Shown: in pieces, positions 16,073 to 21,611 of the stretch
Position numbering within the stretch: the first letter of the stretch is position 1
Layout: every line of letters begins with the position of its first letter
DNA from: Carpediemonas membranifera BICM
Lineage: Eukaryota; Protista; Fornicata
Reading direction: 5' to 3'
Assembly: GCA_019828565.1 (NCBI GenBank)
Contig: JAHDYR010000002.1
Location: 124,001-188,000 of the forward strand
Length of the DNA: 64,000 bases
Notes under the pieces: generated by a model
The model's input: only the letters and a program-made list of their open reading frames with translations
The model's database searches: none
What the model was told of the DNA's origin: nothing
Made by a program: the position numbers and the translations under genes

Positions 16073-17593
16073 TTACCTGACCTGGTTCCTGAGGATCTGA
16101 TCGATTTCCTTGACCTTATTCTGCACATCCTCGTCCGACCCCCCAAACACCTTACCCTGTTCGTTCTGCAGCACGTATGTGGCCGTAGCGTGGGTGCACC
16201 TCCAGTACCTCGACCTTGAGTCAAACTGCCCGCCCGAGATAAACGCGTAGTCTCCTGCCGGGGTGACGTTCTGTGCCCTGAGGAACTTGCTGGTCTCCAG
16301 GGCCTGGTGGTAGTGGGGGATCGGGAAGTCCGGGTCCTTCCACACCGGGACGAACACCACGAATGACAGAGGCACCCCGGCCTGCTCAGCCCGCTCGAGC
16401 TGGGCATTTACGAGGTCGGCCGTGCGGTCCATGACCTCGAGTGTGAAGGGCGGGTTGGCCTCGTACGACCCGCTGGTAATGCCAAGGTCGAAGGCAGACC
16501 CGAGGGACCCGAAGAAAACGTCGATGTCGGGGAAGGCGGAGCAGTAGTGGGAGAAGTAGCAGTTCGTGGGCGAGGCGAAGAGCTCCATGCCCACACCAAA
16601 GGCAGTCACCAGATGCTCGAAGACGGCCTCGGGGGCGGCCGCGTGGAAGGCACGGCCCTGGAACCGAGATGGACCAAAGAAAGTGTTGTAGCGGAGTAGG
16701 AGGACGAACACAGCCCTGTTGAAGTGGACGAGGTCCGGGTCAGCGGTGCAGTGTCGCGTGTACAGCTCCTTGAGCTTGCTGAGGTGCAGCTTACCAATGT
16801 GGAGCCGCTTGTTGCCGTGGTCGACGGCACAGTCGTCCCTCCCCTCAGTAATAGTCACGGCAGCAGTGGAGTCGCCCTCCTGCCTCTGGGGCCTGGTCCC
16901 GAGCTGCGCCTCGGTCGTCTGGATCAGGTGCGAGTGGATCGACCGCATGGCCGAGTCAAACACGGGTCTCAGGGTAGCACGGACGGTCTTACACGCCTCG
17001 ACGAACGCTGTGACGTCAGGTCTGTCCGGCTCGAGGGTCTTGTCCATTGCTGCGAGGGCAGCGGGCACGTCCTCCGAGGCCTTCCCATGGTCAGTCCAGT
17101 CAGACACGGCCTTCTTGTACTCAGCAGCGAACTGGCGCAGGTGTCCTACGTTGTCGAACAGTGTGGTGAGGGGGATGGGGAAGGCCTCGTATAGGTCCGT
17201 CTCGAGCACAGAGGAGGAGACAAGCACCTCGGGGCACCGCAGGACGGGGTCGGCAGAGGACTTGGGGGTCTCTGCAACCATCTCGAACAGCCAGCGGTTG
17301 AAGGATTCCTTGCGGGGCCTGGTGTGGAGCTGGTCCTTGCAGATCTTGATGTACTCGTCGCGGAGCTTCAGAACAATGTCCGCACGCCACATTTCTTCGG
17401 AAACAGTGGGCATAAGGCGATCTACCTCATCAATAGAGGACTGAATGGCTTCGGCTGATGAGTCTACGGGAGATTCTGCGGGGCACAGTGTTTTGCAATC
17501 AAGGAGGAAGTTCCACGGGTTGATGATGGGGCGATCCCTCTCACGATACGGTGCATCACGGCGTCTACCATCATTTCTTCCACGACGACCCAT
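16073..17593 (-). CDS. PCIF1: mRNA cap-adjacent m6Am methyltransferase (PCIF1/CAPAM-like), no WW domain
   Basis: ESFNRWLFE, LLLRY, HAAAP, ELFASP-N, YCSAFPD-D-FFGS-GS and catalytic GSYEANPPF, LSFVVFVPVW: the PCIF1 catalytic-domain signature. Confidence 0.88.
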   Translation of the reverse strand: MGRRGRNDGRRRDAPYRERDRPIINPWNFLLDCKTLCPAESPVDSSAEAIQSSIDEVDRLMPTVSEEMWRADIVLKLRDEYIKICKDQLHTRPRKESFNRWLFEMVAETPKSSADPVLRCPEVLVSSSVLETDLYEAFPIPLTTLFDNVGHLRQFAAEYKKAVSDWTDHGKASEDVPAALAAMDKTLEPDRPDVTAFVEACKTVRATLRPVFDSAMRSIHSHLIQTTEAQLGTRPQRQEGDSTAAVTITEGRDDCAVDHGNKRLHIGKLHLSKLKELYTRHCTADPDLVHFNRAVFVLLLRYNTFFGPSRFQGRAFHAAAPEAVFEHLVTAFGVGMELFASPTNCYFSHYCSAFPDIDVFFGSLGSAFDLGITSGSYEANPPFTLEVMDRTADLVNAQLERAEQAGVPLSFVVFVPVWKDPDFPIPHYHQALETSKFLRAQNVTPAGDYAFISGGQFDSRSRYWRCTHATATYVLQNEQGKVFGGSDEDVQNKVKEIDQILRNQVR

Positions 17594-17723
17594 AATTGGC
17601 GAGAAAATACGTCAGCGACTTCTGAGCCTTAAAGTGCGGTTTTCGACGAATGCGGCATTCCTCGCCTCCAACGCAGTGCCCGAGCCCCCTCACAGACAAC
17701 CAGCCAAATAATCACTACTTTAC

Positions 17724-19898
17724 TCATCCAATCACGAGCACGAACGCCACCACAGACACTGCGAGCAAAACCACGGCGCCCAACGCTCCCGCCAATACAA
17801 GCCCGTCGCCCGCACTCACAGCAGCTGTGACCTTCGCGCCAAGGAGCATGCGGAGTATCCTGAAGAAGAGCACCTTGATGAGCTCGGACACGGGTGCCTC
17901 CAGGGCGTTAAGACCGTCGTCTGAGGCGTCCACGTGGCCCTCATCGTCCTTGACCTCATGCTCAGCCACACGGGAGGGCCTGGCTCTCCGCTTCTTCTTC
18001 TTGCCCTTCTCCTTGGGCTCGTCTCTCTTACTCTGGGTAGGCTCAACCTTCTTGGTCTTTTGTACTTTCGTCTTGAGAGTGACCTCGACGTCTCTTCCTT
18101 CAGCCCATGCCTTCTCCTCCTCTGTGGCAGGCTCGACAGCGCGGTGCTTGAGGCTGGGGGTGGGTGGATTCGAACCCGAGCTCATTGCTTCTCTCTTGCC
18201 CTTGCGGGCGGTGCGGCCCTGATCCTTCCCAGAAGCTGAGGGGGATGTCTTTCCTGTCTTGGTAGCAGGAGCGGGCTTCTTCTCAGCCTTGGCATGCTTG
18301 GGCGTCTTCTTCTCCCTCACATTCACGTCGACAGGCTCGGGGCTCTTCAGCTCGAGGACCTGCTCGACCTCAGTTACGGCCACCTCCCGAACAAGAGGGG
18401 ACCCGACCTCAGCTTCCCCACTGGGCAGAGTGAAGCCCTGCCTGGCTGCTGGGGGTGGGGTTGAGGGGATGGGGTTGTTGGGCACATGCGTGTTGTTGTT
18501 GCTGGAGCTCGAGGCAAGAACATGCGGGCGATCAGACTCGGCAACCTTGCGGCGACGCATGGCGTAGAACTGGCGCTTGACCTCCTTCTCGTCTCCGGCC
18601 ACAGTCTTGGCCCTACCCTGCCTAGGGCCCATGCCACCACCCCGACCGTGGTGGTTGTTGTTGAGTCGCCGAGTCACGGGACCAGGAGTCGCGTTCGAGT
18701 CGGCTCGGGCCTTGGTTACGGTGACAACGTCCGGGACAGGCTGGGGTTCCTCAAAGGAGGGGCTGGGTGAGGAGACAGAGACGGGGATCGGCTTTTCCAC
18801 CACTATGGCCATCGTGGCCGACTCGCGGGCAATGGGGGTCGGGCCAGCGACAGCAGCTGCGAAAGAAAGCTTGGGCTTGATGGTCCTAGGTGGTGAGGGC
18901 GCCTTGGGCGGGCTCCGAGGACTGGCATGTGCCCCGTTTCGCAGGTTTGCCCAACGATCGATGTCGCGACCGGGGCTCGGGCTCTTCCCGCTGGCTCCGT
19001 CCCTGTAGAGCATGGGACGTTCGAACGGCAGGTTGGGCTTCATCTTGGTGACGAAAGAAGTAGCCCTCGATCTGTTGGGGCTTGAGGTGGCAGAGATGCT
19101 GAGGTCGCTAATGTCGCCCCAACGGACGCTACCAGGCGACTGGTGGGTGAAGGAATCAGCGTCCATGCTCTCCGCTCCGCTGTCGATAGAGCTAAACTCG
19201 GCTTTGAGGCCGTCGAGCAGAGCTTCGAACGAGACGACCCTGTCGTCACCTAACTGGGTCAGGTCTCCAGTAGAAGGGCGGCGGGACATGGCGCGAGAGG
19301 CGGGGAGTGAGGTCAGCATAAACTGCTTCTTCGGGGAGGGTGTCGCGTTGGCTGGGGCGGGGGCGACGCTCGTGGAGCTGATGAGCTCATGGTGCAGGGT
19401 AAACTTCATCTTCCGGCCGGAATACAGGCCTCTGCGACGGAGGGCGCGGCGTAGGGCGTTGATGTAGCGCTGATCGATGATGGAGGTCCACACTGTAAAC
19501 GTAGCCTTGTGGGCTTTGACCGAGAGGCAGACTCCGGTGACGTGTTTGAGCAGGACGGCCTCAATGCGCCTCTTGATGAACAGATCGATCACTGACTCCC
19601 AGTTCTTCTGAATATCGGCCTCGCCGGTCGGCCAGAGGAAGGATAGGTGGCCGCCATCGATGTTTTGAGGGGCTTCCCAGGTTGGAGGGACGCCTTCTTC
19701 GAATATTTTCACGGTGAAAGGCGTATCGAGAGCGCTAATATTCATATATGGCCTGATGGCTGCATCGAACTCCTCTTCGGTGCGGCAGCAGGCGATACTT
19801 GCTTTCGCAGCGCGTACCTGATACTCGGAAGCGGAAATGCCGGTATGCGGCGTCTTATTGTTATCGAAGTAAAGCTGGAGCGGCTTGAAGCGTGCCAT
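17724..19898 (-). CDS. eIF4E-domain protein with long disordered region and C-terminal hydrophobic (putative transmembrane) tail, 724 aa
   Basis: N-terminal ~175 aa: FEEGVPPTWEAPQNIDGG, QKNW, VTGVCLSVK, FTVWT (eIF4E core). C-terminus GLVLAGALGAVVLLAVSVVAFVLVIG. First ATG at 19898. Confidence 0.8.
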   Translation of the reverse strand: MARFKPLQLYFDNNKTPHTGISASEYQVRAAKASIACCRTEEEFDAAIRPYMNISALDTPFTVKIFEEGVPPTWEAPQNIDGGHLSFLWPTGEADIQKNWESVIDLFIKRRIEAVLLKHVTGVCLSVKAHKATFTVWTSIIDQRYINALRRALRRRGLYSGRKMKFTLHHELISSTSVAPAPANATPSPKKQFMLTSLPASRAMSRRPSTGDLTQLGDDRVVSFEALLDGLKAEFSSIDSGAESMDADSFTHQSPGSVRWGDISDLSISATSSPNRSRATSFVTKMKPNLPFERPMLYRDGASGKSPSPGRDIDRWANLRNGAHASPRSPPKAPSPPRTIKPKLSFAAAVAGPTPIARESATMAIVVEKPIPVSVSSPSPSFEEPQPVPDVVTVTKARADSNATPGPVTRRLNNNHHGRGGGMGPRQGRAKTVAGDEKEVKRQFYAMRRRKVAESDRPHVLASSSSNNNTHVPNNPIPSTPPPAARQGFTLPSGEAEVGSPLVREVAVTEVEQVLELKSPEPVDVNVREKKTPKHAKAEKKPAPATKTGKTSPSASGKDQGRTARKGKREAMSSGSNPPTPSLKHRAVEPATEEEKAWAEGRDVEVTLKTKVQKTKKVEPTQSKRDEPKEKGKKKKRRARPSRVAEHEVKDDEGHVDASDDGLNALEAPVSELIKVLFFRILRMLLGAKVTAAVSAGDGLVLAGALGAVVLLAVSVVAFVLVIG

Positions 19899-20685: not shown

Positions 20686-21611
20686 TTAGAAGTGGCCGGC
20701 CATGCAGCCCATGCTCTCGATACCGCACTCATCAACACCACGCTTGATCTTGAAGGTGCCACCGATACCCCAGTCATAGCCCCAGGAGTTGGCAACTGTC
20801 CAGTAGGGAGTGTTGTTCTCAACGCCCCAGCCGATGATCTTGATGGCGTGGCCACCCATCTCAGCGCCAGAGGTGTGGGAGTAGACACCGGAGGTGTAGT
20901 AGTAGAAATCACGATAGACGATGAAAGCAGCCTCGATGGGGCCGTATTTGTAGATCTCGTCCTGGATCTCCTCAACGGAGTTGAGCTGCTTGAAGGAGGT
21001 AGCGTAGTACTTCTGGGGGGCGGAGCCGTCCTCACAGGTGGAGGGGCAGGCGGGCACGTCACCCTGGGCGGACTTGTAGGAAAGGCAAGAGTTGGGGACG
21101 ATGCCGTAGTTCTTGATGTAGTTCCAGACGTTGTACATAGCACCACCGTTGCAGCCGTGATCGGTGTGGTCGCAGGAGACGAGCCACTGAGCGGAGAACT
21201 TCACAGACTCGCCCTTGGCGATGCAGTAGCGGTCAGAGGAGGACTCGGCGGCGCCGAAAGCCCAGCAGGAGCCGCACTGGGCCTGGTTGCGGATCTCCTT
21301 GACGGTGGGGCAGGAAGCGCCCCACTTGTCGCGGGAATCGAAGGACTCGGGGAGGGTGTAATCAACCTTGAAGGTGGACTCGCGGAACATGCGGGGGCGG
21401 CGAGCGGGGATGGTGCGCATGACCATGCGGGAGAGCTCCCAGTCAGACTTGCCAACGAACTGGTCGTGGATGCCGACCTATGTGAGAAAAGAATATGGTG
21501 GCGTGAACAGACCTCGAAGGAAGGGTTGGATTGGCGGATCATCTCAGCCTCGTGCTGGGAGAGCTGAGCGAACACAGTGGCGACAATAGCCAAGGCAATG
21601 ATGAGCTTCAT
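20686..21611 (-). CDS. Cathepsin B-like cysteine protease (papain C1A), 2 exons, intron 21478-21512
   Basis: Signal peptide MKLIIALAIVATVFA; QAQCGSCWAF, GCNGG, GGHAI, ANSWG. Splicing the 35-nt GT..AG intron joins SFE to VGIHDQF in frame. No occluding loop. Confidence 0.95.

What the first reader, a model, noticed from the sequence alone, without database searches (positions are those of the whole stretch)
17724..19898. eIF4E-family protein with a predicted C-terminal membrane anchor and no eIF4G-binding tryptophan
Seen: an eIF4E core, ~500 aa of low-complexity Ser/Pro/basic linker, an amphipathic segment and a ~25-residue hydrophobic C-terminus. By manual alignment the cap-binding W102/E103 (PTWE), W130 and W166 are kept and W56 appears as Tyr, but TVEDFW (W73, the eIF4G/4E-BP surface) is TEEEFD. 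Known: characterised eIF4Es are soluble. Inference: a tail-anchored cap-binding protein that could tether or repress mRNAs at the ER or at a mitochondrion-related organelle.
Basis: partly seen in the sequence, partly recalled or inferred. Interest (0 to 1): 0.8.

Follow-up and report, generated by a model that had tools for sequence, protein, structure and literature searches.

The report
Tail-anchored eIF4E-family cap-binding protein
This protist gene encodes a relative of the mRNA cap-binding factor eIF4E joined by a long floppy linker to a membrane anchor at its very end, a design kept in a sister species and seen here in a few other protists, which suggests that some cells fasten mRNA 5' ends directly to a membrane.

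Summary
Window 17724-19898 (-) is one uninterrupted 724-codon ORF. Residues 1-176 are an eIF4E domain: Pfam IF4E E 2e-14, AF2 pLDDT above 90, Foldseek TM 0.72-0.80 to solved eIF4E and 4EHP structures. About 490 residues of disordered Ser/Pro/basic linker follow. Then come a basic cluster, a helix at 670-691 and a helix at 699-723 that is strongly hydrophobic, with the stop one residue later.

The cap-contacting W102/E103, W130 and W166 equivalents are kept. W56 is Tyr and W43 is Leu, a class-II-like pattern. The dorsal W73 is Asp.

The only close relative, a 605-aa protein probably from Carpediemonas frisia (51% identity in the domain), has the same layout, the same Asp and its own C-terminal membrane helix. 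A gene-model artefact is therefore unlikely.

Weaker eIF4E relatives from a skoliomonad-like metamonad, from amoebozoans and from marine metatranscriptomes also end in a C-terminal membrane helix. I found no paper describing this.

Cap binding, membrane insertion, the target organelle and the function (tethering or silencing mRNAs, most likely at the ER) are all inferences. I rate it a new variant of a known kind.

The parts
17724..19898 (-). Complete intronless CDS, 724 aa plus a TGA stop. It is identical to a 724-aa protein already in public collections (P0001).
19371..19898 (-). eIF4E domain, residues 1-176
   Evidence: Pfam IF4E E 2.2e-14. AF2 pLDDT above 90. Foldseek hits to 5wb5, 2jgb, 1ejh and others, TM 0.72-0.80.
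19821..19823 (-). Y26, aligned with human W56, the cap-stacking residue. It is Tyr, as in class II eIF4E/4EHP.
   Evidence: Alignment A2 column: Y in 35, W in 13 and F in 8 of 60 sequences. Caveat: the AF2 model places it in a short helix, 23-32.
19764..19766 (-). D45, aligned with human W73 / yeast W75, the dorsal eIF4G/4E-BP contact
   Evidence: phmmer alignment to yeast eIF4E. A2 column: W in 45 of 60 sequences, and D only in this protein and its orthologue.
19674..19679 (-). W74-E75, aligned with human W102-E103 (cap stacking and N7-methyl-guanine recognition)
   Evidence: W in 58 of 60 sequences, E in 59 of 60
17892..19370 (-). Disordered Ser/Pro/Ala/basic linker, residues 177-669, containing short conserved islands
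   Evidence: pLDDT below 50. Composition. No paralogue in the genome. No Atlas match.
19185..19325 (-). Conserved linker islands at residues 192-238: an SRRPS basophilic-kinase-like site and a predicted helix at 224-235
   Evidence: Pairwise alignment with P0002. AF2 helix with pLDDT about 65.
19050..19127 (-). Conserved Ser-rich island, residues 258-283
18537..18590 (-). Predicted basic helix, residues 437-454, with an aromatic residue followed by RRR(K/R), conserved in the orthologue
   Evidence: pLDDT about 73
17970..18008 (-). Lys/Arg cluster, residues 631-643, about 55 residues before the membrane helix. A comparable cluster precedes the anchor in all tail-anchored groups found.
17826..17891 (-). 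Juxtamembrane helix, residues 670-691, hydrophobic with K and R and moderately amphipathic
   Evidence: AF2 helix with pLDDT about 70. Hydrophobic moment up to 0.48 and KD at most 1.4.
17727..17804 (-). C-terminal transmembrane helix (tail anchor), residues 699-724, with one residue after the helix
   Evidence: KD 3.05. Summed insertion free energy about -3.3 kcal/mol, using a scale recalled from memory. AF2 helix with pLDDT 84-91. The orthologue also has a C-terminal helix.

Best explanation
The gene encodes a lineage-specific member of the eIF4E family that is a tail-anchored membrane protein. Its cap-binding domain faces the cytosol. It hangs on a disordered tether of about 490 residues that ends in a juxtamembrane helix and one C-terminal transmembrane helix.

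Insertion would be post-translational, by a Get3-type route, most likely into the ER or nuclear-envelope membrane system. The domain keeps the residues that recognise the m7G cap but has lost the dorsal Trp through which eIF4E recruits eIF4G and 4E-BP-type partners.

I therefore read it as a cap-binding protein that does not initiate translation. It would capture capped mRNAs near a membrane and hold, silence or localise them. The conserved short motifs in the tether (a kinase-type SRRPS site, two short helices and a basic cluster) would be its regulatory and partner-binding sites.

Shown here: the ORF, the fold, the residue pattern, the hydrophobic C-terminus and their conservation in a second species. 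Inferred: membrane insertion, topology, organelle, cap binding and the effect on mRNAs.
For: The ORF is single and open, with coding-type GC3 throughout and no in-frame stop in the linker against 13.6 expected. It is identical to the public 724-aa gene model.

The eIF4E fold is supported. W74/E75, W100 and W137 are kept. Y26 is in place of W56 and L7 in place of W43, as in class II proteins. K128 is in place of R157.

D45 is in place of W73 in both Carpediemonas proteins, while three of the other four paralogues in the same genome keep the Trp. MIF4G and GYF proteins are present in the genome, so dorsal-site partners plausibly exist.

The C-terminal helix at 699-723 has KD 3.05, and the N-terminus has no hydrophobic segment. 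A hydrophobic C-terminus this strong is unique among 174 frames in the window.

The orthologue P0002 is 605 aa, from a separate assembly and a separate Logan contig. It has the same order of parts: domain, conserved islands, basic cluster, acidic patch, aromatic-basic helix and terminal membrane helix. A neighbouring enzyme is only 58-59% identical between the two genomes.

A Get3/ArsA homologue scores E 4e-96 in the genome.

Independent eIF4E groups with C-terminal membrane helices occur on mRNA-sized contigs from RNA data sets.
Against: There is no RNA evidence for this gene.

No dedicated transmembrane or tail-anchor predictor was available. The insertion energy uses a scale recalled from memory.

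The W56-equivalent loop is two residues longer than usual and is modelled as a helix. R112 is His. The K159/K162 region is only partly basic. Cap affinity could therefore be low or lost.

The target membrane cannot be read from the sequence. The basic cluster could equally be a nuclear-targeting signal.

The domain sits on a long branch, so its class assignment is unsupported by phylogeny.
Confidence: 0.55

Rival explanations
1. The protein has the same tail-anchored architecture, but it sits in the nuclear envelope or inner nuclear membrane. It would be directed there by the Lys/Arg cluster upstream of the anchor together with the long unfolded linker. It would meet capped mRNAs at or just after export, rather than on bulk ER.
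For: A KKKKRR-type cluster lies about 55 residues before the membrane helix. It is conserved in the orthologue, and comparable clusters precede the anchor in the other tail-anchored groups. From my own knowledge, an NLS plus a long unfolded linker is a known route for membrane proteins to reach the inner nuclear membrane in yeast.
Against: Basic residues on the cytosolic side of an anchor are also expected from the positive-inside rule. No NLS predictor was run and there is no localisation data. In the known cases the linker lies between the NLS and the membrane helix. Here the long linker lies on the other side of the cluster.
Confidence: 0.15
2. The anchor targets the outer membrane of the mitochondrion-related organelle. 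There the protein would collect mRNAs for organelle proteins so that they are translated locally.
For: Tail anchors are a common way to reach organelle outer membranes. The organism has such organelles (general knowledge; not tested here).
Against: The helix is long (about 25 residues) and very hydrophobic (KD 3.05). No basic residues follow it, because the protein ends one residue later. In well-studied systems, outer-membrane tail anchors are less hydrophobic and are flanked by basic residues (own knowledge). Without the dorsal Trp the protein is unlikely to promote initiation by the canonical route.
Confidence: 0.1
3. The eIF4E fold no longer binds caps. It would serve as a membrane-tethered protein-interaction module, or be a decaying paralogue.
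For: hR112 is His, hW56 is Tyr in an altered loop, hW43 is Leu and the dorsal Trp is lost. The branch is long. The Pfam score is modest, at 54 bits.
Against: W74/E75, W100 and W137 are all kept, and they are identical in an orthologue only 51% identical overall. Tyr at the W56 position still supports cap stacking in solved 4EHP structures (top hits; own knowledge). The domain is the best-conserved part of the protein, which argues for selection on it.
Confidence: 0.15
4. This is a gene-model or assembly artefact. An eIF4E gene and an unrelated downstream membrane peptide would be read as one ORF by chance in GC-rich DNA.
For: GC-rich DNA gives long chance ORFs. No reads could be laid on the locus.
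Against: The linker frame has 0 stops against 13.6 expected, and its GC3 is gene-like throughout. The same fused layout occurs in an independent assembly of another species and in a Logan contig of its reads. The public annotation, which was built with RNA-seq hints according to PMC8516963, calls the same 724-aa product.
Confidence: 0.03

Closest known systems
Class II eIF4E (human 4EHP/eIF4E2, plant nCBP)
   Same: Tyr at the W56 position and a non-Trp residue at W43. W102/E103/W166 are kept. 2jgb (4EHP with m7GTP) is the second-best structural hit. 4EHP does not bind eIF4G and acts as a repressor (own knowledge), which is how I think this protein works.
   Different: 4EHP and nCBP are soluble proteins of about 220-250 aa. 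They keep the dorsal Trp and use it to bind 4E-T and GIGYF. Here that residue is Asp, and the protein carries about 550 extra residues ending in a membrane helix. The tree does not place it with nCBP.
Leishmania IF4E-1 (PDB 5wb5)
   Same: It is the best sequence hit and the best fold hit among solved structures. It is a divergent protist eIF4E.
   Different: It is soluble and binds its partner 4E-IP1 on the dorsal side. Identity is only 27%. It has no membrane anchor.
Tail-anchored membrane proteins (for example Sec61-beta, cytochrome b5, SNAREs)
   Same: One transmembrane helix at the extreme C-terminus, no signal peptide and a cytosolic functional domain. A Get3 homologue is present.
   Different: To my knowledge no described tail-anchored protein carries an eIF4E domain, and none appeared in the paper searches. 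Insertion was not tested.
Uncharacterised eIF4E relatives with C-terminal membrane helices found here
   Same: All have an eIF4E domain, a low-complexity linker, a basic cluster and a terminal hydrophobic helix. They are P0039 (NCBI KAL0226824.1, Eukaryota sp. TZLM1-RC), group A including Nematostelium gracile, group B and group C.
   Different: They are 290-540 aa, and most keep the dorsal Trp. Many group A members also have a hydrophobic N-terminus. The best tree places them in four separate positions, although a single clade is not rejected (AU p 0.32). Sequence similarity to the Carpediemonas pair is weak (E about 1e-4 to 1e-5).
Membrane-anchored RNA-binding tethers (for example mitochondrial AKAP1/MDI with KH domains)
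   Same: The working principle is the same: an RNA-binding module is fixed to an organelle membrane so as to localise or control mRNAs (own knowledge).
   Different: They use a different fold and an N-terminal anchor, and they bind the mRNA body rather than the cap. They are not homologous.

Membership tests
eIF4E family (Pfam PF01652) | Significant match to the family profile above the curated cut-off | tested here: met
   54 bits against a cut-off of 28.7, E 2.2e-14, residues 9-155
eIF4E family (Pfam PF01652) | The eIF4E fold: a curved antiparallel sheet backed by helices | tested here: met
   AF2 pLDDT above 90. 183 PDB matches at E 0.001 or below, and the 50 listed are all eIF4E or 4EHP, with TM 0.72-0.80.
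eIF4E family (Pfam PF01652) | Cap-binding residues: the aromatic pair (hW56, hW102), hE103, hW166 and basic phosphate contacts | tested here: inconclusive
   W74, E75 and W137 are kept. hW56 is Y26, hR157 is K128 and hR112 is H84. Binding itself cannot be tested with these tools.
eIF4E family (Pfam PF01652) | Dorsal Trp (hW73) that binds eIF4G/4E-BP, a feature of initiating eIF4Es | tested here: not met
   D45 here and D in the orthologue. W in 45 of 60 aligned relatives.
Class II eIF4E (4EHP/nCBP) | hW43 replaced by Tyr/Phe/Leu and hW56 replaced by Tyr/Phe (definition recalled from Joshi et al. 2005) | tested here: met
   L7 and Y26 in alignment A2
Class II eIF4E (4EHP/nCBP) | Groups with 4EHP/nCBP in a phylogeny | tested here: not met
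   The careful ML tree places the Carpediemonas pair on a long branch away from the nCBP clade.
Tail-anchored membrane proteins | A single transmembrane helix within about 30 residues of the C-terminus | tested here: met
   Helix 699-723 of 724 aa, KD 3.05, AF2 pLDDT 84-91
Tail-anchored membrane proteins | No N-terminal signal peptide or other membrane segment | tested here: met
   The N-terminus starts directly with the eIF4E fold. No other 19-mer reaches KD 1.6, and helix 670-691 reaches at most 1.4. No dedicated signal-peptide predictor was run.
Tail-anchored membrane proteins | Post-translational insertion with the N-terminus in the cytosol | not testable with these tools
   Only the presence of a Get3/ArsA homologue (E 4e-96) could be shown.

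The most novel reading that the evidence does not exclude
Membrane-anchored eIF4Es are an unrecognised and possibly ancient class of the eIF4E family, present in metamonads, amoebozoans and marine protists. In this class the mRNA cap-binding module is wired directly to a membrane by a tail anchor. This would give cells a one-protein way to tether, sort or silence capped mRNAs at endomembranes. The Carpediemonas form is the most derived member: it has the longest tether and has lost the eIF4G/4E-BP surface.
Probability: 0.25. Interest if true: 0.8.

Novelty: new variant of a known kind. Interest (0 to 1): 0.62.

Why it matters
Textbooks treat eIF4E and its relatives as soluble factors whose position in the cell is set by partner proteins. 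An eIF4E-family protein with its own membrane anchor would be a direct physical link between the mRNA 5' cap and a membrane. That bears on how mRNAs are localised and silenced.

It also bears on how translation control works in metamonads, a group with a reduced initiation machinery. The finding can be tested directly: cap-resin binding, fractionation, localisation of a tagged protein and identification of bound mRNAs. The wider set of tail-anchored relatives found here gives comparative material.

Tried and rejected
I did not use read laying, because it accepts only run ids from that tool. The gene therefore has no read-level check.

Homologue searches.
- The word-based search restricted to long proteins found only the protein itself.
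- The same kind of search with P0039 also found only itself.
- The exhaustive phmmer search found the orthologue and the other anchored groups.
- An Atlas search with the linker plus tail gave only meaningless matches, TM below 0.2.
- The linker and tail have no paralogue in the genome.

An internal 4E-binding motif, [YF]xxxxL followed by a hydrophobic residue, is absent from both orthologues.

A functional link to the adjacent PCIF1-like gene is not supported. The orthologue's neighbours are different: an ankyrin/DUF2838 gene and a GH14 gene. The GH14 homologues in this genome lie on other contigs.

The bacterial-type promoter and terminator scan does not apply to this eukaryote.

Single origin of all anchored eIF4Es. 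The best tree needs four changes, but the AU test does not reject one clade (p 0.32). The question stays open.

Source of P0002. No paper names the assembly GCA_002919055.1. Its assignment to C. frisia rests on matching contig count and GC in PMC8516963 and on read accessions of similar date.
Full report
WHAT IS THERE

On the minus strand, a stop-to-stop frame runs from 20222 to 17724. Its first ATG is at 19898. From there it encodes 724 residues and ends in TGA at 17726-17724, and a TAG lies two codons further on. The C-terminus is therefore fixed whichever stop is used.

The frame looks coding along its whole length. GC at the third codon position is 0.63-0.79 in every 100-codon block, like neighbouring genes. 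The linker (485 codons tested) has no in-frame stop, against 13.6 expected from shuffles. The other two forward frames carry 18 and 25 stops.

The translated product is letter for letter a 724-aa protein already held in public collections, from a 496,590-base contig.

The host genome has 24,237,836 bases in 69 contigs. This matches the Carpediemonas membranifera assembly in Table 1 of PMC8516963 (24.2 Mb, 69 contigs, 57.1% GC). That annotation used RNA-seq intron hints.

THE eIF4E DOMAIN

- Pfam IF4E matches residues 9-155 at E 2.2e-14.
- An AlphaFold2 model of residues 1-300, built on a 60-sequence alignment, has pLDDT above 90 for about residues 30-170.
- Foldseek returns only eIF4E and 4EHP structures at the top. 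These include Leishmania IF4E-1 (5wb5), human 4EHP with m7GTP (2jgb) and human or mouse eIF4E with cap analogues. TM by target is 0.72-0.80.

Residue mapping comes from the phmmer alignment to yeast eIF4E and the 60-sequence alignment.

| Human position | Here | Note |
|---|---|---|
| W102/E103 | W74/E75 | kept |
| W130 | W100 | kept |
| W166 | W137 | invariant in all 60 sequences |
| R157 | K128 | conservative change |
| W56 | Y26 | Tyr |
| W43 | L7 | Leu |
| W46 | Y10 | Tyr |
| R112 | H84 | His |
| W73 (dorsal) | D45 | Asp |

The Leu/Tyr pattern at positions 43 and 56 is the one that defines class II eIF4Es (4EHP, nCBP), as I recall from Joshi et al. 2005. The tree does not group the protein with nCBP.

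One caveat applies to Y26. The loop that carries it is two residues longer than in canonical eIF4E and is modelled as a short helix, so its stacking role is not assured.

THE REST OF THE PROTEIN

The full-length AlphaFold2 model leaves residues about 177-669 at pLDDT below 50. The exceptions are short helices at 224-235 and 437-454. It then predicts a helix at 670-691 (pLDDT about 70) and a helix at 699-723 (pLDDT 84-91).

- The last helix has a Kyte-Doolittle maximum of 3.05. Its summed insertion free energy is about -3.3 kcal/mol, on a scale I recalled from memory.
- Only one residue follows the helix, and no basic residue follows it.
- The helix at 670-691 carries Lys and Arg, reaches a KD of only about 1.4 and has a moderate hydrophobic moment of up to 0.48. 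I read it as a juxtamembrane helix rather than a second membrane span.
- The N-terminus has no hydrophobic segment.
- A C-terminus this hydrophobic is unique among the 174 long frames of the window.

This is the anatomy of a tail-anchored protein. The genome encodes a Get3/ArsA-type ATPase (E 4e-96).

CONSERVATION

An exhaustive phmmer search of 1.84 billion representatives with residues 1-175 found one close relative, P0002 (605 aa, E 1e-52, 51% identity). It lies as a single uninterrupted ORF on a 6-kb contig of assembly GCA_002919055.1, and again on a Logan contig of run SRR4018424.

The contig count and GC of that assembly fit the C. frisia metagenomic bin described in PMC8516963 and PMC5437931. 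The assignment to C. frisia is an inference.

P0002 has the same order of parts:
- the eIF4E domain, with the same Tyr and the same Asp;
- conserved islands (an SRRPS site, the short helix, a Ser-rich block, an aromatic residue plus RRR helix, and an SPEPV block);
- a Lys/Arg cluster and an acidic patch;
- an aromatic-basic helix and a terminal hydrophobic helix with nothing after it.

A neighbouring glycoside hydrolase is only 58-59% identical between the two genomes. The species are therefore well separated, and keeping this layout is meaningful. It removes the artefact explanation for practical purposes.

Gene order is not conserved, so the PCIF1-like gene 130 nt downstream in this window is probably a chance neighbour.

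THE SAME DESIGN ELSEWHERE

Some of the weak hits of the same search, and of a follow-up profile search, also end in a C-terminal hydrophobic helix:
- P0039, 349 aa, NCBI KAL0226824.1, from 'Eukaryota sp. TZLM1-RC'. From memory I take this to be a skoliomonad metamonad.
- Group A, about twenty proteins of roughly 290-440 aa, including Nematostelium gracile (Amoebozoa).
- Group B, two proteins, one of them from MMETSP.
- Group C, from marine metatranscriptomes.

Groups B and C sit on mRNA-sized contigs from RNA data sets.

All these groups show a Lys/Arg cluster some tens of residues before the anchor.

The careful ML tree of the domain places the anchored proteins in four positions. The Carpediemonas pair is on a long branch. 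An AU test does not reject a single clade, with p 0.32. One origin or several therefore remains open.

Four full-text searches found no paper describing an eIF4E with a transmembrane or tail anchor.

CONTEXT IN THE GENOME

C. membranifera has five IF4E loci. Three keep the dorsal Trp, one (contig 26) has Asn, and this one has Asp. MIF4G-domain and GYF-domain proteins are present. This agrees with earlier unchecked notes of the scan on eIF4G-like and GYF proteins. Partners for a dorsal site thus plausibly exist, and this paralogue has opted out of them.

HOW IT MOST LIKELY WORKS

Shown: the fold, the residue pattern, the anchor and their conservation.

Inferred:
- The protein is inserted post-translationally with the eIF4E domain in the cytosol, on a flexible tether of about 490 residues.
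- It binds m7G caps, probably weakly as 4EHP does.
- It cannot recruit eIF4G by the canonical surface, so it holds capped mRNAs at the membrane in a non-initiating state, or hands them to partners bound to the tether motifs.

The very hydrophobic, unflanked anchor favours the ER and nuclear-envelope system over the mitochondrion-related organelle. The basic cluster leaves a nuclear-envelope variant open. Loss of cap binding is the main functional rival.

WHAT COULD NOT BE DONE

No dedicated transmembrane, signal-peptide or NLS predictor was available. Model coordinates could not be inspected, so I could not test whether the conserved helix 224-235 docks on the domain.

VERDICT

It is a new variant of a known family, with a real chance that it belongs to a wider, undescribed class of membrane-anchored eIF4Es.

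Noticed in passing
window 16073-17593 (-): A 506-aa protein lies 130 nt downstream on the same strand. It has a strong PCIF1-family match (PF12237, E 2e-55) and an NPPF motif, so it is a candidate cap-adjacent adenosine methyltransferase. The adjacency to the eIF4E gene is not kept in the orthologue's contig.
   Followed up: partly
window 17719-17724 (-): The stop codon overlaps the hexamer AGTAAA (TGAGTAAAG). This resembles the AGTRAAY polyadenylation signal I recall from Giardia. It may mark a very short 3' UTR before the next gene.
   Followed up: no
P0054-P0060, P0063, P0026, P0012 (group A relatives): Many amoebozoan-type anchored eIF4Es also begin with a conserved, moderately hydrophobic N-terminus (MP.T.KD.LLFLLSSVLVSS). 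If it is a signal peptide, the eIF4E domain would face the lumen or the outside, which would be very odd. If it is a second anchor, both ends would be fixed to the membrane. The Nematostelium protein lacks it.
   Followed up: no
G000:C26:261910-262362 (L002 1348-2112, -): A second C. membranifera eIF4E paralogue (254 aa) also lacks the dorsal Trp, which is Asn, and has Tyr at the W56 position. It has no membrane helix.
   Followed up: partly
G000:C4:412612-413556 (L008): The Get3/ArsA homologue matches over the full profile but has one in-frame TAA. This is probably an intron.
   Followed up: no
window 20686-21426 (-): The upstream neighbour is a papain-family (cathepsin B-like) cysteine protease (PF00112, E 4e-62). 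The ORF as listed starts close to the mature domain, so a signal or pro-region exon may lie upstream.
   Followed up: no
P0004 cluster (includes a Euglena mutabilis transcript): This is a very divergent eIF4E-like group with Gly at W73, Tyr at W102 and Asp at E103. It is the tree neighbour of the Carpediemonas pair (98/82), possibly through long-branch attraction.
   Followed up: no
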